A stretch of 64,000 bases of DNA from Pecten maximus (Eukaryota), in the NCBI RefSeq assembly GCF_902652985.1, contig NC_047019.1, positions 30,504,001 through 30,568,000 of the forward strand. The letters are read 5' to 3'. Made by a program: the position numbers and the translations under genes. Under the pieces are notes generated by a model that made no database searches, had not been told where the DNA came from, and worked only from the letters and a program-made list of their open reading frames with translations. Shown here in pieces: positions 1,876 through 58,053 of the stretch (the stretch's first letter is position 1; each line of letters starts with the position of its first letter).

Positions 1876-2075
1876 ACTTTGCATAGATTTGTGTATGCTG
1901 TATTATTTAAATTGTTCTCTACTTTTTTATATCAATGGTCCAAAATGGCAATACCACATGTAAATGATGTCACCACCGTTACTTTGATCCCTCAATGGGA
2001 GTCCTAGAAGGACGAAACACTGCTCTATGGTGAAGCTCCATTTTTTTAGCTCTTTATTCGACCTAACTTTCAATT

Positions 2076-2262
2076 TATATGCATAAAAACGGTGAGCCCA
2101 ACACGGAAATTCATTCAATGGTCCAATCTATTGGAGAGCGTTGTTTACATGTTTCAGCTATAGGGTAGCCATCATCAGAACCTGTAGATGTAAACAACGC
2201 TCTCCAATAAATCGGACCATTGAATGAATCTCTGTGTTTGGCTCACCGTTTTTATACATATA
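2076..2262. repeat. Long inverted repeat: 75-bp arms (2076-2150, 2188-2262), 37-nt loop
   Basis: Reverse complement of the right arm matches the left arm at 69/75 positions, no gaps. Confidence 0.95.
2143..2181 (-). ncRNA. Minimal type I hammerhead ribozyme motif (Penelope-like-element style)
   Basis: Minus strand: GUU-CUGAUGA-U-GGCUA-CCCUA-UAGCU-GAAAC-AU-GU-A-AAC. Full core, 5-bp stem II, palindromic stem III (ACAUGU), GUA triplet, only 3-bp stem I. Confidence 0.7.
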
Positions 2263-2829
2263 TTACCTGGATTTTTTGGTGAGACCTCCTGTATACACCT
2301 GTATCCACGGTAGATTAGTCTGGATCACTACGATTCTTTACCTTTCGTGTCTCCATCCCCCCTTCCGTACTGATTTAACTTTTAATTTGATTTAAAACAT
2401 GCTAATATCTTGTGTTTCATTTGTTCAATCATTTGATGACATCACCAATTTAAAATGATGATATTATTAATTCATTTTAAACTAATGATATTATTAATTC
2501 ATTTTAAACTAATGTAAAGATACTTTCCTGCATACTTAAATTTTAGAGCATTAATTATGATATTTCAACAGCCATGGTAAATTTCGACAGCTACAATAAG
2601 AAAATAATATAAAGACAGAGTCAATCTTGATGCACACCGCTGTATGGTATGTTGCTCTTCTCTATACTTTTCGCCTTTTTCCTCTTAAGATTATTAAATC
2701 ATTTGTTATTCACAAAAAATTCCTTTACTTTTCTTTTTTCGGATCAGTCTGAAAACTTAAGATACAAAACTACAGACAAACAAGAACCTACAAATACATT
2801 TCAAGAAGAGTTTAAAGATTAACACAGAA

Positions 2830-33204: not shown

Positions 33205-36200
33205 GTCAGATGTTATCTAAATTGTACGGTATGTATAATGCCAGAAAGAGTCTGGACGGTATAGTTTCTAAGGTTGGAGATATCCTGATTATATGTTATC
33301 TGAGGTTATATGAAGACTATGTTATCTATGGTTGGACAGTATACAGACTGTATGTTATCTATGGTTGGACAGTATACAGACTGTATGTTATCTATGGTTG
33401 GAGGGTATACAGACTGTATGTTATCTATGGGTGGAGGGTATACAGACTGTATGTTATCTATGGTTGGACAGTATTCAGACTGTATGTTATCTATGGTTGG
33501 GGGTATACAGACTGTATGTTATCTATGGTTGGAGAGTATACAGACTTTATGTTATCTATGGTTGGAGAGTATACAGACTGTATGTTATCTATGGTTGGAG
33601 GGTATCCAGACTGTATGGTATCTATGGTTGGAGGGTATACAGACTGTATGTTATCTATGGTTGGAGGGTATCCAGACTATGTTATCTATAGTTGGAGGGT
33701 ATACAGACTGTATATTATCTATGGTTGGAGGGTATCCAGATTGTATGTTATCTATGGTTGGAGGATATCCAGACTGTATGTTATCTATGGTTGGAGGGTA
33801 TCCAGACTGTATGATATCTATGGTTGGAGGGTATACAGACTGTATGTTATCTATGGTTGGAGGGTATACAGACTGTATGTTATCTATGGTTGGAGGGTAT
33901 ACAGACTGTATGTTATCTATGGTTGGAGGGTATACAGACTGTATGTTATCTATGGTTGGAGAGTATACAGACTGTATGTTATCTATGGTTGGAGAGTATA
34001 CAGACTGTATGTTATCTATGGTTGTAGGGTATACAGACTGTATGTTATCTATGGTTGGAGGGTATACAGACTGTATGTTATCTATGGTTGGAGGGTATCC
34101 AGACTGTATGTTATCTATGGTTGGGGGTATACAGTCTGTATGTTATCTATGGTTGGAGGGTATACAGACTCTATGTTATCTATGGTTGGACAGTATTCAG
34201 ACTGTATGTTATCTATGGTTGGAGGGTATACAGACTCTATGTTATCTATGGTTGGACAGTATACAGACTGTATGTTATCTATGGTTGGAGGGTATACAGA
34301 CTGTATGTTATCTATGGTTGGGGGGTATACAGACTGTATATTATCTATGGTTGGAGAGTATACAGACTGTATGTTATCTATGGTTGGAGGGTATACAGAC
34401 TCTATGTTAGCTATGGTTGGACAGTATTCAGACTGTATGTTATCTATGGTTGGAGGGTATCCAGACTGTATGATATCTATGGTTGGAGGGTATACAGACT
34501 GTATGTTATCTATGGTTGGAGGGTATACAGACTGTATGTTATCTATGGTTGGAGGGTATACAGACTGTATGTTATCTATGGTTGGAGGGTATACAGTCTG
34601 TATGTTATCTATGGTTGGAGGGTATACAGACTGTATGTTATCTATGGTTGGAGGGTATCCAGACTGTATGTTATCTATGGTTGGAGGGTATCCAGACTGT
34701 ATGTTATCTATGGTTGGAGGGTATACAGACTGTATGATATCTATGGTTGGAGGGTATCAAGACTGTATGTTATCTATGGTTGGAGGGTATCAAGACTGTA
34801 TGTTATCTATGGTTGGACAGTATACAGACTGTATGTTATCTATGGTTGGAGGGTATACAGACTGTATGTTATCTATGGTTGGAGGGCATACAGACTGTAT
34901 GTTATCTATGGTTGGAGGGTATACAGACTGTATGTTATCTATGGTTGGGGGGTATACAGACTGTATGTTATCTATGGTTGGAGAGTATACAGTCTGTATG
35001 TTATCTATGGTTGGAGGGTATACAGACTCTATGTTATCTATGGTTGGACAGTATTCAGACTCTATGTTATCTATGGTTGGAGGGTATACAGACTCTATGT
35101 TATCTATGGTTGGACAGTATACAGACTGTATGTTATCTATGGTTGGAGGGTATACAGACTGTATGTTATCTATGGTTGGGGGTATACAGACTGTATATTA
35201 TCTATGGTTGGAGAGTATACAGACTGTATGTTATCTATGGTTGGAGGGTATACAGACTCTATGTTATCTATGGTTGGACAGTATTCAGACTGTATGTTAT
35301 CTATGGTTGGAGGGTATCCAGACTGTATGATATCTATGGTTGGAGGGTATACAGACTGTATGTTATCTATGGTTGGAGAGTATACAGACTGTATGTTATC
35401 TATGGTTGGAGGGTATCCAGACTGTATGTTATCTATGGTTGGAGAGTATACAGACTGTATGTTATCTATGGTTGGAGGGTATACAGACTGTATGTTATCT
35501 ATGGTTGGAGGGTATACAGTCTGTATGTTATCTATGGTTGGAGGGTATACAGACTGTATGTTATCTATGGTTGGAGGGTATCCAGACTGTATGTTATCTA
35601 TGGTTGGAGAGTATACAGACTGTATGTTATCTATGGTTGGAGGGTATCCAGACTGTATGTTCTCTATGGTTGGAGAGTATCCAGACTGTATGTTATCTAT
35701 GGTTGGAGAGTATACAGACTGTATGTTCTCTATGGTTGGAGGGTATCCAGACTGTATGTTATCTATGGTTGGAGGGTATCCAGACTGTATGTTATCTATG
35801 GTTGGAGAGTATACAGACTGTATGTTATCTATGGTTGGAGGGTATCCAGACTGTATGTTATCTATGGTTGGAGGGTATCCAGACTGTATGTTATCTATGG
35901 TTGGAGGGTATACAGACTGTATGTTATCTATGGTTGGAGGGTATACAGTCTGTATGTTATCTATGGTTGGAGGGTATTCAGACTGTATGTTATCTATGGT
36001 TGGAGGGTATCCAGACTGTATGTTATCTATGGTTGGAGGGTATACAGACTGTATGTTATCTATGGTTGGAGGGTATACAGACTGTATGTTATCTAAGGTT
36101 GGAGGGTATACAGACTGTATGATATCTATGGTTGGAGGGTATCCAGACTGTATGTTATCTATGGTTGGAGGGTATACAGACTGTATGTTATCTATGGTTG

Positions 36201-39200
36201 GAGAGTATACAGACTGTATGTTATCTATGGTTGGAGGGTATACAGACTGTATGTTATCTATGGTTGGAGAGTATACAGACTGTATGTTATCTATGGTTGG
36301 AGAGTATACAGACTGTATGTTATCTATGGTTGGAGGGTATACAGACTGTATGTTATCTATGGTTGGAGGGTATACAGACTGTATGTTATCTATGGTTGGA
36401 GGGTATCCAGACTGTATGTTATCTATGGTTGGGGGTATACAGACTGTATGGTATCTATGGTTGGAGGGTATACAGACTGTATGTTATCTATGGTTGGAGG
36501 GTATACAGACTGTATGTTATCTATGGTTGGAGGGTATACAGACTGTATGTTATCTATGGTTGGAGAGTATACAGACTGTATGTTATCTATGGTTGGAGGG
36601 TATACAGACTGTATGTTATCTATGGTTGGAGAGTATACAGACTGTATGTTATCTATGGTTGGAGGGTATACAGACTGTATGTTATCTATGGTTGGAGAGT
36701 ATACAGACTGTATATTATCTATGGTTGGAGGGTATACAGACTGTATGTTATCTATGGTTGGACAGTATCCAGACTGTATGTTATCTATGGTTGGAGGGTA
36801 TACAGACTGTATGTTATCTATGGTTGGAGAGTATACAGACTGTATGTTATCTATGGTTGGAGGGTATACAGACTGTATGTTATCTATGGTTGGGGGGTAT
36901 ACAGACTGTATATTATCTATGGTTGGAGGGTATACAGACTGTATGTTATCTATGGTTGGAGGGTATACAGACTGTATGTTATCTATGGTTGGAGGGTATA
37001 CAGACTGTATGTTATCTATGGTTGGGGGGTATACAGACTGTATATTATCTATGGTTGGAGAGTATACAGACTGTATGTTATCTATGGTTGGAGGGTATAC
37101 AGACTGTATGCTATCTATGGTTGGAGAGTATACAGACTGTATGTTATCTATGGTTGGACAGTATACAGACTGTATGTTATCTATGGTTGGAGAGTATACA
37201 GACTGTATGTTATCTATGGTTGGAGGGTATCCAGACTGTATGTTCTCTATGGTTGGAGGGTATACAGACTGTATGTTATCTATGGTTGGGGGGTATACAG
37301 ACTGTATGTTATCTATGGTTGGAGGGTATACAGACTGTATGTTATCTATGGTTGGACAGTATCCAGACTGTATGATATCTATGGTTGGAGGGTATACAGA
37401 CTGTATGCTATCTATGGTTGGAGAGTATACAGACTGTATGTTATCTATGGTTGGAGGGTATACAGACTGTATGTTATCTATGGTTGGGGGGTATACAGAC
37501 TGTATATTATCTATGGTTGGAGGGTATACAGACTGTATGTTATCTATGGTTGGAGGGTATACAGACTGTATGTTATCTATGGTTGGAGGGTATACAGACT
37601 GTATGTTATCTATGGTTGGGGGATATACAGACTGTATATTATCTATGGTTGGAGAGTATACAGACTGTATGTTATCTATGGTTGGAGGGTATACAGACTG
37701 TATGCTATCTATGGTTGGAGAGTATACAGACTGTATGTTATCTATGGTTGGGGGTGTACAGACTGTATGCTATCTATGGTTGGAGGGTATACAGACTGTA
37801 TGCTATCTATGGTTGGAGAGTATACAGACTGTATGTTATCTATGGTTGGAGGGTATCCAGACTGTATGTTATCTATGGTTGGAGGGTATACAGACTGTAT
37901 GTTATCTATGGTTGGAGGGTATACAGACTGTATGTTATCTATGGTTGGAGAGTATCCAGACTGTATGTTATCTATGGTTGGAGGGTATACAGACTGTATG
38001 TTATCTATGGTTGGAGGGTATACAGACTGTATGTTATCTATGGTTGGAGAGTATACAGACTGTATGTTATCTATGGTTGGAGGGTATACAGACTGTATGT
38101 TATCTATGGTTGGAGGGAATACAGGCTGTATGTTATCTATGGTTGGAGGGAATACAGGCTGTATGTTATCTATGGTTGGAGGGTATACAGACTGTATGTT
38201 ATCTATGGTTGGGGGTATACAGACTGTATATTATCTATGGTTGGAGAGTATACAGACTGTATGTTATCTATGGTTGGAGGGTATACAGACTCTATGTTAT
38301 CTATGGTTGGACAGTATTCAGACTGTATGTTATCTATGGTTGGAGGGTATCCAGACTGTATGATATCTATGGTTGGAGGGTATACAGACTGTATGTTATC
38401 TATGGTTGGAGAGTATACAGACTGTATGTTATCTATGGTTGGAGGGTATCCAGACTGTATGTTATCTATGGTTGGAGAGTATACAGACTGTATGTTATCT
38501 ATGGTTGGAGGGTATACAGACTGTATGTTATCTATGGTTGGAGGGTATACAGTCTGTATGTTATCTATGGTTGGAGGGTATACAGACTGTATGTTATCTA
38601 TGGTTGGAGGGTATCCAGACTGTATGTTATCTATGGTTGGAGAGTATACAGACTGTATGTTATCTATGGTTGGAGGGTATCCAGACTGTATGTTCTCTAT
38701 GGTTGGAGAGTATCCAGACTGTATGTTATCTATGGTTGGAGAGTATACAGACTGTATGTTCTCTATGGTTGGAGGGTATCCAGACTGTATGTTATCTATG
38801 GTTGGAGGGTATCCAGACTGTATGTTATCTATGGTTGGAGAGTATACAGACTGTATGTTATCTATGGTTGGAGGGTATCCAGACTGTATGTTATCTATGG
38901 TTGGAGGGTATCCAGACTGTATGTTATCTATGGTTGGAGGGTATACAGACTGTATGTTATCTATGGTTGGAGGGTATACAGTCTGTATGTTATCTATGGT
39001 TGGAGGGTATTCAGACTGTATGTTATCTATGGTTGGAGGGTATCCAGACTGTATGTTATCTATGGTTGGAGGGTATACAGACTGTATGTTATCTATGGTT
39101 GGAGGGTATACAGACTGTATGTTATCTAAGGTTGGAGGGTATACAGACTGTATGATATCTATGGTTGGAGGGTATCCAGACTGTATGTTATCTATGGTTG

Positions 39201-41958
39201 GAGGGTATACAGACTGTATGTTATCTATGGTTGGAGAGTATACAGACTGTATGTTATCTATGGTTGGAGGGTATACAGACTGTATGTTATCTATGGTTGG
39301 AGAGTATACAGACTGTATGTTATCTATGGTTGGAGAGTATACAGACTGTATGTTATCTATGGTTGTAGGGTATACAGACTGTATGTTATCTATGGTTGGA
39401 GGGTATACAGACTGTATGTTATCTATGGTTGGAGGGTATCCAGACTGTATGTTATCTATGGTTGGGGGTATACAGACTGTATGGTATCTATGGTTGGAGG
39501 GTATACAGACTGTATGTTATCTATGGTTGGAGGGTATACAGACTGTATGTTATCTATGGTTGGAGGGTATACAGACTGTATGTTATCTATGGTTGGAGAG
39601 TATACAGACTGTATGTTATCTATGGTTGTAGGGTATACAGACTGTATGTTATCTATGGTTGGAGAGTATACAGACTGTATGTTATCTATGGTTGGAGGGT
39701 ATACAGACTGTATGTTATCTATGGTTGGAGAGTATACAGACTGTATATTATCTATGGTTGGAGGGTATACAGACTGTATGTTATCTATGGTTGGACAGTA
39801 TCCAGACTGTATGTTATCTATGGTTGGAGGGTATTCAGACTGTATGTTATCTATGGTTGGAGAGTATACAGACTGTATGTTATCTATGGTTGGAGGGTAT
39901 ACAGACTGTATGTTATCTATGGTTGGGGGGTATACAGACTGTATATTATCTATGGTTGGAGGGTATACAGACTGTATGTTATCTATGGTTGGAGGGTATA
40001 CAGACTGTATGTTATCTATGGTTGGAGGGTATACAGACTGTATGTTATCTATGGTTGGGGGGTATACAGACTGTATATTATCTATGGTTGGAGAGTATAC
40101 AGACTGTATGTTATCTATGGTTGGAGGGTATACAGACTGTATGCTATCTATGGTTGGAGAGTATACAGACTGTATGTTATCTATGGTTGGACAGTATACA
40201 GACTGTATGTTATCTATGGTTGGAGAGTATACAGACTGTATGTTATCTATGGTTGGAGGGTATCCAGACTGTATGTTCTCTATGGTTGGAGGGTATACAG
40301 ACTGTATGTTATCTATGGTTGGGGGGTATACAGACTGTATGTTATCTATGGTTGGAGGGTATACAGACTGTATGTTATCTATGGTTGGACAGTATCCAGA
40401 CTGTATGATATCTATGGTTGGAGGGTATACAGACTGTATGCTATCTATGGTTGGAGAGTATACAGACTGTATGTTATCTATGGTTGGAGGGTATACAGAC
40501 TGTATGTTATCTATGGTTGGGGGGTATACAGACTGTATGTTATCTATGGTTGGAGGGTATACAGACTGTATGTTATCTATGGTTGGAGGGTATACAGACT
40601 GTATGTTATCTATGGTTGGAGGGTATACAGACTGTATGTTATCTATGGTTGGGGGATATACAGACTGTATATTATCTATGGTTGGAGAGTATACAGACTG
40701 TATGTTATCTATGGTTGGAGGGTATACAGACTGTATGCTATCTATGGTTGGAGAGTATACAGACTGTATGTTATCTATGGTTGGGGGTGTACAGACTGTA
40801 TGCTATCTATGGTTGGAGGGTATACAGACTGTATGCTATCTATGGTTGGAGAGTATACAGACTGTATGTTATCTATGGTTGGAGGGTATCCAGACTGTAT
40901 GTTATCTATGGTTGGAGGGTATACAGACTGTATGTTATCTATGGTTGGAGGGTATACAGACTGTATGTTATCTATGGTTGGAGAGTATCCAGACTGTATG
41001 TTATCTATGGTTGGAGGGTATACAGACTGTATGTTATCTATGGTTGGAGGGTATACAGACTGTATGTTATCTATGGTTGGAGAGTATACAGACTGTATGT
41101 TATCTATGGTTGGAGGGTATACAGACTGTATGTTATCTATGGTTGGAGGGAATACAGGCTGTATGTTATCTATGGTTGGAGGGAATACAGGCTGTATGTT
41201 ATCTATGGTTGGAGAGTATACAGACTGAATGTTAACTATGGTTGGAGGGTATACAGACTATGTTATCTAAGGTTGGAAGGTATACAGACTGTATGTTATC
41301 TATGGTTGGAGGGTATACAGATTGTATGTTATCTATGGTTGGAGGGAATACAGACTGTATGTTATCTATGGTTGGAGAGTATCCAAACTGTATGTTATCT
41401 ATGGTTGGAGAGTATACAGACTGTATGTTATCTATGGTTGGAGAGTATACAGACTGTATGTTATCTAAGGTTGGAGAGTATCCAGACTGTATGTTATCTA
41501 TGGTTGGAGAGTATACAGACTGTATGTTATCTATGGTTGGAGGGTATACAGACTGTATGTTATCTATGGTTGGAGGGTATACAGACTGTATGTTATCTAT
41601 GGTTGGAGAGTATCCAGACTGTATGTTATCTATGGTTGGAGGGTATACAGACTGTATGTTATCTATGGTTGGAGGGTATACAGACTGTATGTTATCTATG
41701 GTTGGAGGGTATACAGACTGTATGTTATCTATGGTTGGAGGGTATACAGACTGTATGTTATCTATGGTTGGAGAGTATACAGACTGTATGTTATCTATGA
41801 TTGGAGGGTATACAGACTGTATGTTATCTATGGTTGGAGGGTATACAGACTGTATGTTATCTATGGTTGGAGGGAATACAGGCTGTATGTTATCTATGGT
41901 TGGAGAGTATACAGACTGAATGTTAACTATGGTTGGAGAGTATACAGACTGTATGGTA
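33205..41958. repeat. 33-bp satellite, ~260 copies (TATGTTATCTATGGTTGGAGGGTATACAGACTG), with 3033-bp higher-order duplication
   Basis: Visible; largely stop-free in all three + frames; identical ORF pairs offset by 3033 bp. Confidence 0.99.
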
Positions 41959-42163
41959 TTCTAAAGTATCAAGGGTCTGTGGATTTCACAAGATGGAAAC
42001 TAGTATTGGCGGGTATCCACAGTTAGGGGGGAGGGGTATCCTGTGTCTATAAGCAATTCTTGCCAATCAATATTTCATTGCTTATCTGACATCTGATTTG
42101 AGTGGCCAGTCGTCTGTGACTAAAGTTTGTCAAGGGAGCTATGATAACAGTGAGAGCTCAGCT

Positions 42164-55007: not shown

Positions 55008-56214
55008 AAGCATCAAATATATAGGTCACATTCACCATCACCAACAGTTTTCTGTTAGTGTGAAGTACTAATATACATAGATATGGACAGTTAACCTGCT
55101 GCATGGATAGACCATGTAAAATATCTATTTCTAATGTAAGTACAAACATCAATTTGATTTCCATTCATGTCTCTTAACATATCTCCATTTCTCTCATTGT
55201 ACAGAGAACAGTACAAACTGATCTAATTCCAGAAGGCTTCCACAAACATGTTCTTATCTAAATATAATAATCTTTGCATCATACAGTGAAGCTGGCTGAG
55301 AATGGGACCACTGGTCTACGTTGTAAATACACAATTGTAACATTGGTTTATATGGTGTAATTATTTTCCATAATCTGTTTAGTTACTTTTGGTATGGCAT
55401 CATTAACTTCTAAGGCAATATCAATTACTAAAACAATTTTATTGTATCAGTTTGTAGGGAATAGACATCATGGAGGCTGTATATAGGCTAGTACTATTGC
55501 CTGGTAACACTGGTATAGACCAGTAGATCTGGACATTCCTACCAGTTTAATACCTGGTGTAAAGCGTTATTAGTCTTCAGCAATGAACAATTTTAACAGC
55601 AATTTTTTTATCATCGAATTGTAAGTAGAACAACACATATTTTGTGTGTAATTGGAACTACTAATGCCAGGGTTAGTACAATTTGTATTTGTTATTGTCA
55701 CGGTTCTTGTCTTATATTGTTATATAAGAACATATTGTTCTATCATAACAAACCGTAGTCATAATTATTTTCTGACCTTTTATTGCATGACTATCACACC
55801 AAAGAAAAAACTTTTTCCCATTAACAATTCAGAAGCTTAAGGACTTCATGAGAAAACATTTCTAATTCAAAATCTCATTTGACCTCAAAGATTACTTTGA
55901 CTTTAAAGTTAGCAGGCTTCAGGATCTGACCAGAAGGCTGTAACCTCTTTTGTCATGAAATTGCATATTAAACCATATTAATTTTCAGTTAATGTTGCTT
56001 ATTTCTGTGGAATTTCTAGTTGTGGAGAACTGTGGGGCCTTTTCTAACCATCAGAATGTGCCCCAAAACATATAATGACATCAATGAAGTGATTTCATTA
56101 CAATATATGTTTTTGAAATAAAGAACACTTCAAAGGTTTGCATAGGCACACAAGATATTAGCACCTTTCAATATAAGAGTCAGATACTGTAGAGCCAAAA
56201 AATGAATTAAATTT

Positions 56215-56263
56215 CATCATACAGCTGTTTCATCCCTCTAGGACTCATCAGTGATGTTAGGGA
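56215..56263 (-). ncRNA. Hammerhead ribozyme, array unit 1 (intact core)
   Basis: CUGAUGA, 4-bp stem II, GAAAC, palindromic ACAGCUGU, GUA triplet, stem I CAUCA/UGAUG. Confidence 0.85.
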
Positions 56264-56409
56264 CATCATACAGCTGTTTCATCCCTCTAGGACACATCAG
56301 TGATGTTAGGGACATCATACAGCTGTTTCAGCCCTCTAGGACACATCAGTGATGTTAGGGACATCATACAGCTGTTTCAGCCCTCTAGAACACATCAGTG
56401 ATGTTAGGG

Positions 56410-56459
56410 ACATCATACAGCTGTTTCATCCCTCTAGGACTCATCAGTGATGTTAGGGC
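56410..56459 (-). ncRNA. Hammerhead ribozyme, array unit 5 (intact core)
   Basis: As unit 1; 6-bp stem I ACAUCA/UGAUGU. Confidence 0.85.
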
Positions 56460-57144
56460 CATCATACAGCTGTTTCAGCCCTCTAGAACACATCAGTGAT
56501 GTTAGGGACATCATACAGCTGTTTCAGCCCTCTAGAACACATCAGTGATGTTAGGGACATCATACATTTGTTTCACCCCTCTAGGACACATCAGTGATGT
56601 TAGGGACATCATACAGCTGTTTCAGCCCTCTAGGACTCATCAGTGATGTTAGGGACATCATACAGCTGTTTCGTCCCTCTAGGACTAGTCAGTGATGCCA
56701 GGGACATCATACAGCTGTTTCATCCATCTAGAACACATCAGTGATGTTAGAGACATCATACAGCTGTTTCATCCATCTAAAACACATCAGTGATGTTAGG
56801 GACATCATACAGCTGTTTCATCCATCTAAAACACATCAGTGATGTTAGGGACATCATACAGCTGTTTCAGCCCTCTAGGACTAGTCAGTGATGCCAGGGA
56901 CATCATACAGCTGTTTCATCCATCTAGAACACATCAGTGATGTTAGGGACATCATACAGCTGTTTCATCCATCTAGAACACATCAGTGATGTTAGAGACA
57001 TCATACAGCTGTTTCATCCATCTAAAACACATCAGTGATGTTAGGGACATCATACAGCTGTTTCAGCCCTCTAGGACTCATCAGTGATGTTAGGGACATC
57101 ATACAGCTGTTTCAGCCCTCTAGGACACATCAGTGATGTTAGGG

Positions 57145-57194
57145 ACATCATACAGCTGTTTCATCCCTCTAGGACTCATCAGTGATGTTAGAGA
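57145..57194 (-). ncRNA. Hammerhead ribozyme, array unit 20 (intact core)
   Basis: As unit 5; 5' flank CUCUA is fully complementary to loop II UAGAG. Confidence 0.85.
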
Positions 57195-57286
57195 CGCCAT
57201 ACAGCTGTTTCATCCATTAAGTGTTGCCTAGGGAGTGACAGAGGAAACTGAAATAGGTTGAAAGAAATGTTATTGGGTAAAGAAAA

Positions 57287-57671
57287 GATATTGGGGCCAG
57301 TGAGTGGTAGTTTTAGTATTGGGACCAGTGAGTGGTAGTTGATAGTATTGGGACCAGTGAGTGGTAGTTGATAGTATTGGGACCAGTGAGTGGTAGTTGA
57401 TAGTATTGGGACCAGTGAGTGGTAGTTGATAGTATTGGGACCAGTGAGTGGTAGTTGAGGGCATTGGGACCAGTGAGTGGTAGTTGAGGGCATTGGGACC
57501 AGTGAGTGGTAGTTGAGGGCATTGGAACCAGTGAGTGGTAGTTGAGGGCATTGGGACCAGTGAGTGGTAGTTGAGGGCATTGGGACCAGTGAGTGGTAGT
57601 TGAGGGCATTGGAACCAGTGAGTGGTAGTTGAGGGCATTGGGACCAGTGAGTGGTAGTTGAGGGCATTGGG
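57287..57671. repeat. 29-bp minisatellite, ~13 copies (TGGGACCAGTGAGTGGTAGTTGA[TAGT/GGGC]AT)
   Basis: Visible; two variant blocks. Confidence 0.96.
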
Positions 57672-58053
57672 ATAGCAGACAGATAACAACTGTTAAGCTA
57701 CAATTACAACTTCTGATTGTTTGTGGTCATAGTGAAAATGCAATGCTGCCATTGGGAATCATTAACGATTCATGCAGAACTCCAATCCTACTGTCAGCAA
57801 CTGTTAAGTACACTTCATCAAGTTTGACAAATTTGCTATGGCAGAGAAGTGAAGCATCATGGTGCTTTTTTAGGCTTCGTCTGCTCTTCATTCTGATGGT
57901 GTCCACCATCGGCCAGCTGCCAAATCTCTAAATGGGAATCTGATCTAGACACAACACCAGCCAGCCATAACTATTATGTGGATGAAGATGTTTCGCCATG
58001 CAGTGTCATAAAAAAAGGATGTGATTTGTTTATTTTCTTTTCATCCATGTCAG

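What the first reader, a model, noticed from the sequence alone, without database searches (positions are those of the whole stretch)
56215..57215. Satellite made entirely of hammerhead ribozymes: 49-nt unit = one ribozyme, no spacer
Seen: each minus-strand unit reads UCCCUA-ACAUCA-CUGAUGA-GUCC-UAGAG-GGAU-GAAAC-AGCU-GUA-UGAUG, giving stem I (ACAUCA/UGAUGU), the CUGAUGA box, stem II, GAAA, stem III and a GUA cleavage triplet in correct hammerhead order; 20 head-to-tail units. Established: hammerheads occur in newt satellite 2, schistosome Sm-alpha, cricket pDo500, non-LTR retrozymes and Penelope-like elements, where monomers are much longer than the ribozyme itself. Inference: a minus-strand transcript would self-process into 49-nt monomers or multiples with 5'-OH and 2',3'-cyclic phosphate ends, possibly circularisable, i.e. 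a minimal ribozyme-only retrozyme. Alternative: a Penelope-derived hammerhead passively amplified in a minisatellite-prone region.
Basis: partly seen in the sequence, partly recalled or inferred. Interest (0 to 1): 0.93.

Follow-up and report, generated by a model that had tools for sequence, protein, structure and literature searches.

The report
Decayed hammerhead-ribozyme satellite in scallop
A 1-kb run of 49-base repeats in the king scallop genome descends from a self-cutting hammerhead RNA and belongs to a family of thousands of such units carried by a small mobile element, but this copy is mostly mutated and nothing shows that it still works.

Summary
The array is real: 20 head-to-tail 49-nt units at 56215-57215, with the ribozyme sense on the minus strand. 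"Made entirely of ribozymes" overstates this copy. Only 5 of 20 units keep the CUGAUGA box, 13 carry A9U and 2 carry CUGACUA. One unit (56220-56268) is fully canonical. No unit reaches an Rfam gathering score.

The array belongs to a family spread across the genome (Pecten maximus assembly). 3,772 units carry an exact stem I plus CUGACGA plus GUCC word, on all chromosomes. The family's majority unit is a canonical type I hammerhead, and units in other arrays pass Rfam RF00163.

Arrays sit between two conserved arms that start and end at the two halves of stem I. The arms therefore occupy the loop 1 position, where a classical non-LTR retrozyme carries its body. The 49-nt unit looks like a retrozyme monomer that lost its body.

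Genomic copies decay neutrally. The lethal G8A change is as frequent as the harmless C7U change, and arrays with dead cores expand just as well, so arrays grow at the DNA level. Expression could not be tested. Other first-stage notes of this scan flagged sister arrays in the same genome. Verdict: a new variant of a known kind, and this copy is a relic.

The parts
56215..57215 (-). Array of 20 full 49-nt hammerhead-derived units (57199 down to 56220), plus the UGAUG that opens the downstream arm
   Evidence: TRF period 49, 20.4 copies. Unit list. RF00008 and RF00163 sub-threshold matches on the minus strand only.
56220..56268 (-). The only fully canonical unit: 6-bp stem I, CUGAUGA, stem II GUCC/GGAU, GAAAC, AGCU loop, GUA
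   Evidence: Best Rfam match at 56222-56276, 41.1 bits against a gathering score of 48.5. The predicted hammerhead fold is -16.5 kcal/mol against -19.7 for a competing fold.
56416..56464 (-). Unit with an intact core box and stem II, and one mismatch at the top of stem I
   Evidence: RF00008 39.6 bits.
57151..57199 (-). Unit with an intact core box and stem II; stem I weakened (UGGCGU)
   Evidence: RF00008 35.6 bits.
56105..56219 (-). Conserved downstream arm of the element. It starts with the 5' strand of stem I (UGAUG) and homology to other loci ends about 110 nt later.
   Evidence: nhmmer E 1e-25 with a profile built from other loci. Alignments. At least 40 copies in the genome, the closest at 88% identity directly after sister units on C7.
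57216..57290 (-). 5'-truncated remnant of the conserved upstream arm, ending in a degenerate partial first unit (57200-57235)
   Evidence: nhmmer matches profile positions 212-286 only, E 7e-6. Sequence. It is cut off by the 29-bp minisatellite at 57290-57672.
2000..2447 (+). Second, 5'-truncated copy of the same element: a partial hammerhead (from stem II to the cut site) followed by the downstream arm, which is split by an insertion of about 170 bp with inverted ends
   Evidence: nhmmer hits at 2006-2080 and 2376-2447; sequence.

Best explanation
This is a decayed, 5'-truncated copy of a non-autonomous, retrozyme-type repeat of the king scallop, in which the hammerhead itself has been tandemly amplified. 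The founder unit was a canonical metazoan type I hammerhead: 6-bp helix I, 4-bp helix II, and a 2-bp helix III capped by the palindromic loop AGCU. In the full element the ribozyme block lies between two conserved arms. These arms begin and end at the two strands of helix I, which is where a classical non-LTR retrozyme carries its body of a few hundred nt. The 49-nt unit is that monomer with the body reduced to a 5-nt loop (inferred). Once such a unit was duplicated, arrays grew and homogenised locally by unequal exchange or replication slippage, whether or not the ribozyme worked (shown by the mutation pattern). New loci were seeded by copying array plus arms together, probably through RNA with 5' truncation (inferred). 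In an intact array, neighbouring ACAGCUGU palindromes would pair into an 8-bp helix III and cutting would follow each GUA (inferred from known double-hammerhead behaviour). In this window 15 of 20 units have lost the core, so at most a few junctions could still cut.
For: The array and its parse are confirmed. The family is genome-wide: at least 295 matches on nearly all chromosomes, 2,993 exact junction plus stem I words, 3,772 exact stem I-CUGACGA-GUCC words and 959 exact canonical 3' halves; reversed-pattern controls gave 0. Other arrays pass Rfam RF00163: 33 units at 34.1-37.8 bits in 6 loci. The majority unit over 43 arrays is the canonical hammerhead, and each array has private changes, often in the core. 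Arms: 18 of 38 arrays have the downstream arm adjacent, 12 of 38 have the upstream arm starting at variable profile positions, and only 2 arm hits lie in the opposite orientation. Arms link successive ribozyme blocks in L066, L038 and L049. Decay is neutral: invariant core sites are 11.6% changed against 7-14% in loops. Genome-wide, harmless C7U has 271 units at 27 loci on C1-C4, and lethal G8A has 553 units at about 26 loci. The window's dead-core signature occurs at 8 other loci. A 196-bp higher-order period lies within the array. The architecture matches published canonical metazoan type I hammerheads (PMC4209133).
Against: No RNA evidence: only contigs of uncertain library type were available. 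The reading of the arms as a retrozyme body rests on three loci and on the junction positions. The two arm profiles share no significant terminal similarity, and the exact ends and target-site duplications were not found. No reverse transcriptase or Penelope-like ORF lies within 3 kb of the sampled arrays. About half of the sampled arrays show no arm at a given end. Half of my array sample was picked by similarity to the window or by hammerhead score, so it is not unbiased; the 20 C1 arrays and the whole-genome pattern counts are.
Confidence: 0.78

Rival explanations
1. One reading: a working, ribozyme-only minimal retrozyme. Minus-strand transcripts of this array self-process into 49-nt monomers or multimers that may circularise and seed new arrays.
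For: The motif order and cut sites are correct. The family consensus dimer folds into a hammerhead with an 8-bp helix III between neighbouring units. Some arrays elsewhere are mostly intact, for example L055 with 14 of 21 units complete. Retrozyme circular RNAs are abundant in a mussel (PMC7229834).
Against: In this array 15 of 20 units lack the core box, and the best unit is predicted to prefer a competing fold by about 3 kcal/mol. Conserved arms flank the arrays, which rolling-circle copies of a 49-nt circle would not carry. There is no selection against lethal core changes, and dead arrays expand. There is no expression evidence.
Confidence: 0.08
2. A DNA transposon of the Helentron non-autonomous (HINE) kind, as in oysters, that happens to carry a hammerhead-derived satellite as its central repeat. 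The arms would be its left and right flanks.
For: Bivalve HINEs carry central tandem repeats in a fixed orientation between flanks of 50-100 bp, sometimes with two different arrays (PMC7492417). Several loci here have a second, unrelated minisatellite beside the ribozyme array: the window at 57290-57672, and L051 and L055.
Against: No conserved palindrome or hairpin was found in the downstream arm. The upstream arm is truncated at variable points, as in retroelements. The arms join the array exactly at the two strands of helix I. Sub-terminal inverted repeats were not tested, for want of exact ends.
Confidence: 0.1
3. Host-selected function: the array is kept because ribozyme cutting or the repeat RNA serves the scallop.
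For: None specific. Arrays often lie near ordinary genes.
Against: Neutral decay of core positions and symmetric CpG decay. This copy is mostly dead.
Confidence: 0.02
4. Chance resemblance: an ordinary minisatellite that merely looks like a hammerhead.
For: The window is 50.6% minisatellites.
Against: Rfam E-values reach 3e-7 here and sister arrays pass the curated threshold. Reversed-pattern controls gave 0 against hundreds to thousands of hits.
Confidence: 0.01

Closest known systems
Metazoan non-LTR retrozymes (Cervera and de la Pena 2020, PMC7229834), including the mussel family
   Same: Type I hammerhead in head-to-tail genomic repeats of an invertebrate, dispersed in many loci. The helix sizes are those described for canonical metazoan type I hammerheads: I 6 bp, II 4 bp, III 1-2 bp with a 2-4 nt palindromic loop (PMC4209133). 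The arms sit where the retrozyme body sits.
   Different: Published monomers are 150-450 bp, each with one ribozyme (350-390 bp in mussel). Here the repeating unit is 49 bp, the ribozyme alone, and blocks of 2 to more than 60 ribozymes lie between the arms. Circular RNA is not shown.
Hammerhead satellites: newt satellite 2, Schistosoma Sm-alpha, cave-cricket pDo500
   Same: Satellite-like tandem DNA whose transcripts carry a type I hammerhead with a weak helix III that works in a double-hammerhead arrangement.
   Different: Those monomers are roughly 330-500 bp with long non-ribozyme parts (from my knowledge). Here there is no spacer beyond a 5-nt loop.
Penelope-like element pLTR hammerheads and PLE-derived retrozymes (PMC4209133; Li et al. 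2026 preprint, 10.64898/2026.07.22.740005)
   Same: Hammerhead on a retroelement-like repeat with 5' truncation and partial tandems. The preprint lists vertebrate retrozyme consensus lengths down to 51 bp, so ribozyme-sized repeat units have been tallied before.
   Different: No RT/GIY-YIG ORF was found near the sampled arrays. PLE minimal hammerheads have a longer helix II and a shorter helix I, unlike this canonical type. The 51-bp case is not described in the preprint.
Oyster Cg_HINE elements (PMC7492417)
   Same: Bivalve mobile elements with central satellite-like arrays in a fixed orientation between short conserved flanks, scattered through euchromatin.
   Different: Their repeat units are about 160-180 bp without ribozymes. 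Their flank hallmarks (sub-terminal inverted repeats, a 3' palindrome) are not seen in the downstream arm here.

Membership tests
Hammerhead ribozyme (Rfam CL00010: RF00163 type I, RF00008 type III) | Conserved core CUGANGA ... GAAA with A15.1-U16.1 and a cut site H17 | tested here: inconclusive
   GAAAC and GUA are present in all 20 units. CUGANGA is present in 5 of 20; 13 have A9U and 2 have CUGACUA. The feature is met by 5 units and failed by 15.
Hammerhead ribozyme (Rfam CL00010: RF00163 type I, RF00008 type III) | Three helices around the core in the right order | tested here: met
   Stem I has 6 bp and stem III has 2 bp plus the AGCU loop in nearly all units. Stem II has 4 pairs in units with GGAU and is broken in units with GGCU. 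Rfam aligns the full model length.
Hammerhead ribozyme (Rfam CL00010: RF00163 type I, RF00008 type III) | Score at or above the curated gathering threshold | tested here: not met
   Window: no hit at gathering; the best is 41.1 against 48.5 (RF00008) and 22.5 against 34 (RF00163). Sister arrays do pass: 33 units at 34.1-37.8 bits for RF00163.
Hammerhead ribozyme (Rfam CL00010: RF00163 type I, RF00008 type III) | Self-cleavage in the presence of Mg2+ | not testable with these tools
   Needs in vitro transcription of natural copies.
Non-LTR retrozyme | Type I hammerhead within head-to-tail genomic repeats, in many dispersed loci | tested here: met
Non-LTR retrozyme | Monomer of about 150-450 bp with one ribozyme and a self-paired body | tested here: not met
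   The unit is 49 bp. A body-like sequence exists only as arms around whole arrays.
Non-LTR retrozyme | Expressed as linear and circular monomer RNAs | tested here: inconclusive
   Only contigs of uncertain library type were available. They show family sequences but no ends or strand.
Penelope-like element derivative | Sequence shared with the pLTR of an autonomous PLE (RT plus GIY-YIG) in the same genome | not tested
   No RT ORF lies within about 3 kb of the arrays in the held loci.
Helentron non-autonomous element (HINE) | 3' palindrome and sub-terminal inverted repeats in the flanks | tested here: not met
   No conserved inverted repeat or consensus hairpin in 12 aligned downstream arms. 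Sub-terminal repeats were not assessable without exact ends.

The most novel reading that the evidence does not exclude
The intact sister arrays of this family (not this decayed copy) are transcribed and cut themselves into 49-nt RNAs that are nothing but one closed hammerhead, some of them circular. That would be the smallest natural self-processing repeat RNA, a retrozyme stripped to its ribozyme. It would show how a mobile element's ribozyme can turn into a satellite and then into ordinary minisatellites.
Probability: 0.2. Interest if true: 0.8.

Novelty: new variant of a known kind. Interest (0 to 1): 0.5.

Why it matters
Hammerhead-bearing tandem repeats have been known since newt satellite 2. 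They are now read as retrozymes whose monomers carry a few hundred nt of body. In the scallop the same type of ribozyme repeats with no body at all, in thousands of units, still framed by what looks like the split body of the parent element.

That gives a natural series from retrozyme to ribozyme-only satellite to dead minisatellite. Derived arrays of 39, 42 and 43 bp are already visible. It also gives a clean population-genetic read-out that catalysis is not needed for array growth. For ribozyme biology it offers natural all-ribozyme multimers for testing double-hammerhead cutting and the lower size limit for circular RNA. I found no paper on this in scallops. A 2026 preprint tallies 51-bp retrozyme consensus lengths in vertebrates without describing them.

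Tried and rejected
- **RNA evidence.** The look-up of sequencing runs listed only Logan contigs with a guessed library type, and none was on record as holding the stretch as RNA. Laying four runs gave short contigs from related arrays with 4-7 differences, and no ends or strand. This is inconclusive, not negative.
- **Terminal redundancy.** I tested whether the end of the downstream arm is homologous to the start of the upstream arm. The local alignment score was 21 against a shuffle mean of 19.2, so this is not supported.
- **Conserved 3' hairpin.** Two loci showed a 9-10 bp stem with a 25-nt loop, but RNAalifold on 12 arms found no shared structure. Rejected.
- **Covariation in stems I and II.** Over 602 distinct units, double changes were near the independence expectation. 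This adds no support, as expected for neutrally decaying copies.
- **244- and 292-bp spacings.** Spacings of variant units elsewhere looked like long monomers, but they equal 5 and 6 units minus 1-2 bp, so I did not count them.
- **Arms beside other minisatellites in the window.** Only the remnant at 2000-2447 matched.
- **Adjacent retroelement ORFs.** None found; the neighbouring ORFs are host genes.

Full report
**The observation**

Tandem Repeats Finder reports 56215-57215 as a 49-bp repeat with 20.4 copies, 92% matches and no indels. I read the minus strand and cut it after every GUA. This gives 20 units of exactly 49 nt (57199 down to 56220), preceded by a degenerate partial unit and followed by UGAUG.

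- UGAUGU, loop CCCUA, ACAUCA (helix I)
- the CUGAUGA box
- a 4-bp helix II
- GAAAC
- the tetraloop AGCU, closing a 2-bp helix III
- GUA

The units are not uniform. Five keep CUGAUGA, 13 read CUGAUGU (A9U) and 2 read CUGACUA. Several also have GGCU, which breaks helix II. Three units keep the box and all helices, and only 56220-56268 is perfect.

Rfam finds nothing at its gathering scores in the whole window. With an E-value cut-off, the five box-bearing units match RF00008 at 35-41 bits (best E 3e-7, gathering 48.5). That match uses a helix III formed between the ACAGCUGU palindromes of neighbouring units. A9U units match at 16-28 bits, or match RF00163 at 22.5 bits. From my knowledge of the classical mutational work on minimal hammerheads, changes at A9 cut activity strongly. 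I could not check a number in the papers I could read.

**The genome and the family**

The assembly has 918,306,378 bp in 3,983 scaffolds, the longest of 60,076,705 bp. These are the published figures for Pecten maximus (PMC7191990).

The same repeat is everywhere in it:

| Search | Result |
|---|---|
| Three window units as DNA query | at least 295 matches on nearly all chromosomes |
| Exact junction plus helix I word | 2,993 |
| Exact word for the helix I 3' strand, CUGACGA and GUCC | 3,772 |
| Exact 32-nt pattern from the core box to the cut site, with canonical helix II GUCC/GGAC | 959 |

Reversed-pattern controls gave 0 for each of the three exact-pattern searches.

The majority unit over 43 arrays (835 units) differs from the window's consensus. 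It has N7 = C, A9, loop 2 UAGAA and a G10.1-C11.1 pair, so it is a textbook hammerhead. Units in six other arrays pass the curated threshold of RF00163, type I: 33 hits at 34.1-37.8 bits over the full model.

The helix sizes are those given for canonical metazoan type I hammerheads: I 6 bp, II 4 bp, III 1-2 bp with a 2-4 nt palindromic loop, thought to act as dimers (PMC4209133). The window's array is therefore a derived, damaged subfamily. Its signature (CUGAUGU followed by a UAGA loop) occurs in only 23 units at 9 loci.

**The arms**

The arrays are not naked. Downstream of the last GUA, many loci share about 110 nt that begin with UGAUG. Upstream, many share up to about 190 nt that run into CCCUA-like letters, the 3' strand of helix I and the core box.

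I built profiles from these flanks and counted arrays whose end lies inside the fetched DNA:
- The downstream arm is adjacent to 18 of 38 such arrays.
- The upstream arm is adjacent to 12 of 38.
- The arms are always co-oriented with the ribozyme, apart from two hits.
- The upstream arm starts at very different profile positions (2 to 212). This looks like 5' truncation.

In the window the downstream arm is 56219 down to about 56105 (E 1e-25). Only the last 75 nt or so of the upstream arm remain (57290 down to 57216). Beyond that lies an unrelated 29-bp minisatellite. The closest paralogue, on C7, has sister units (92%) followed directly by the arm (88%).

One arm starts with the 5' strand of helix I and the other ends with its 3' strand. 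Together they occupy loop 1, which is where a type I retrozyme carries its body. In L066 a single hammerhead, the start of the downstream arm, the upstream arm and a 15-unit array follow one another. L038 has a single-hammerhead copy between both arms next to a 5-unit copy. L049 repeats array plus a short body three times at 828 bp.

I therefore read the 49-nt unit as a retrozyme monomer whose body shrank to a 5-nt loop. This step is inference.

**How the arrays grow**

In 20 arrays on C1 chosen only by an exact helix I word, 11 have no unit with an intact core. Each array has its own fixed changes, often in invariant positions. Per-site change is 11.6% at invariant core positions against 7-14% in loops and about 8-12% in stems.

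The two CpGs of the unit give a built-in test, because deamination hits both strands alike. C7 to U is harmless and G8 to A is lethal.

| Scope | Harmless change | Lethal change |
|---|---|---|
| My sample, first CpG | C7U in 19 arrays | G8A in 16 arrays |
| My sample, second CpG | C11.1U in 14 arrays | G12A in 24 arrays |
| Whole genome, first CpG | CUGAUGA: 271 units, 27 loci on C1-C4 | CUGACAA: 553 units, about 26 loci on C1-C4 |

Copies therefore decay neutrally, and arrays with dead ribozymes expand at least as well as live ones. Inside the window's array, identity at a lag of 196 bp (0.938) exceeds that at 49 bp (0.928). This fits duplication of four-unit blocks. Array growth is thus a DNA-level process. 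Dispersal of array plus arms is a separate step whose mechanism I can only infer.

**Folding**

A dimer of the family majority unit has the hammerhead as its minimum-energy fold, with an 8-bp helix III between neighbouring palindromes. Natural units are less clear. A sister unit from L055 and the window's best unit both prefer a helix between GUCC on the loop 1 side and the 3' strand of helix II. For the window's best unit the hammerhead fold is -16.5 against -19.7 kcal/mol. Folding during transcription could still favour the ribozyme, so this is a caution rather than a verdict.

**What could not be shown**

The public runs on offer were contigs with a guessed library type. They contain family sequence but show no ends or strand. 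No retroelement ORF lies near the sampled arrays, and their neighbours are ordinary genes. The downstream arm has no conserved hairpin, which argues against an oyster-type Helentron carrier (PMC7492417). Exact ends and target duplications were not found.

**Comparison and novelty**

The nearest known things are the non-LTR retrozymes of invertebrates (150-450 bp monomers, circular RNAs abundant in mussel; PMC7229834) and the classical hammerhead satellites. A 2026 preprint proposes that animal retrozymes derive from Penelope-like elements. It lists consensus lengths from 51 bp upward in vertebrates without describing the short ones.

I found no paper that links hammerheads with scallops, or that describes a ribozyme-only repeat in bivalves. 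Other first-stage notes of this scan flag sister arrays in the same genome. My searches confirm that such arrays are numerous.

I class the family as a new variant of a known kind, and this particular array as a relic of it.

Noticed in passing
window 1-64000: 50.6% of the window is tandem repeats: more than 20 unrelated minisatellites with units of 20-70 bp, the largest being 262 copies of a 33-bp unit at 33318-41959. All long open frames lie inside these repeats, and no ordinary gene was seen.
   Followed up: partly
window 2086-2254 (+): An insertion of about 170 bp with inverted ends of about 20 bp or more (MITE-like) splits the downstream arm of the second, truncated hammerhead element at 2000-2447. 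That element lies 125 bp after a 38-bp minisatellite (813-1874).
   Followed up: no
window 57290-57672: A 29-bp minisatellite (13 copies, 97% alike) abuts the truncated upstream arm. Several sister loci (L051, L055) also carry a second, unrelated minisatellite beside the ribozyme array.
   Followed up: no
G000 C1:53903339-53903514, C1:2229115-2229707, L035 downstream flank: Arrays with periods of 39, 42 and 43 bp still carry the helix I or core words of the 49-nt unit. The ribozyme satellite seems to be turning into shorter, non-ribozyme minisatellites.
   Followed up: no
L049:2475-4805: Higher-order repeat of 828 bp: 12-14 ribozyme units plus a body of about 120 nt made of the downstream arm, three times in a row.
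   Followed up: partly
window 56221-56277 (-) and L055:2897-2953: The letters GUCC occur twice in each unit (end of helix I 5' strand and helix II 5' strand). GGAC can therefore pair with either, giving a predicted inactive alternative fold about as stable as the hammerhead.
   Followed up: partly
L066:4488-4634 (+) against L066:2588-3826 (-): An inverted partial copy (upstream arm plus one unit) lies about 660 bp from the main element. This arrangement recalls the inverted truncated copies described for Penelope-like elements.
   Followed up: no
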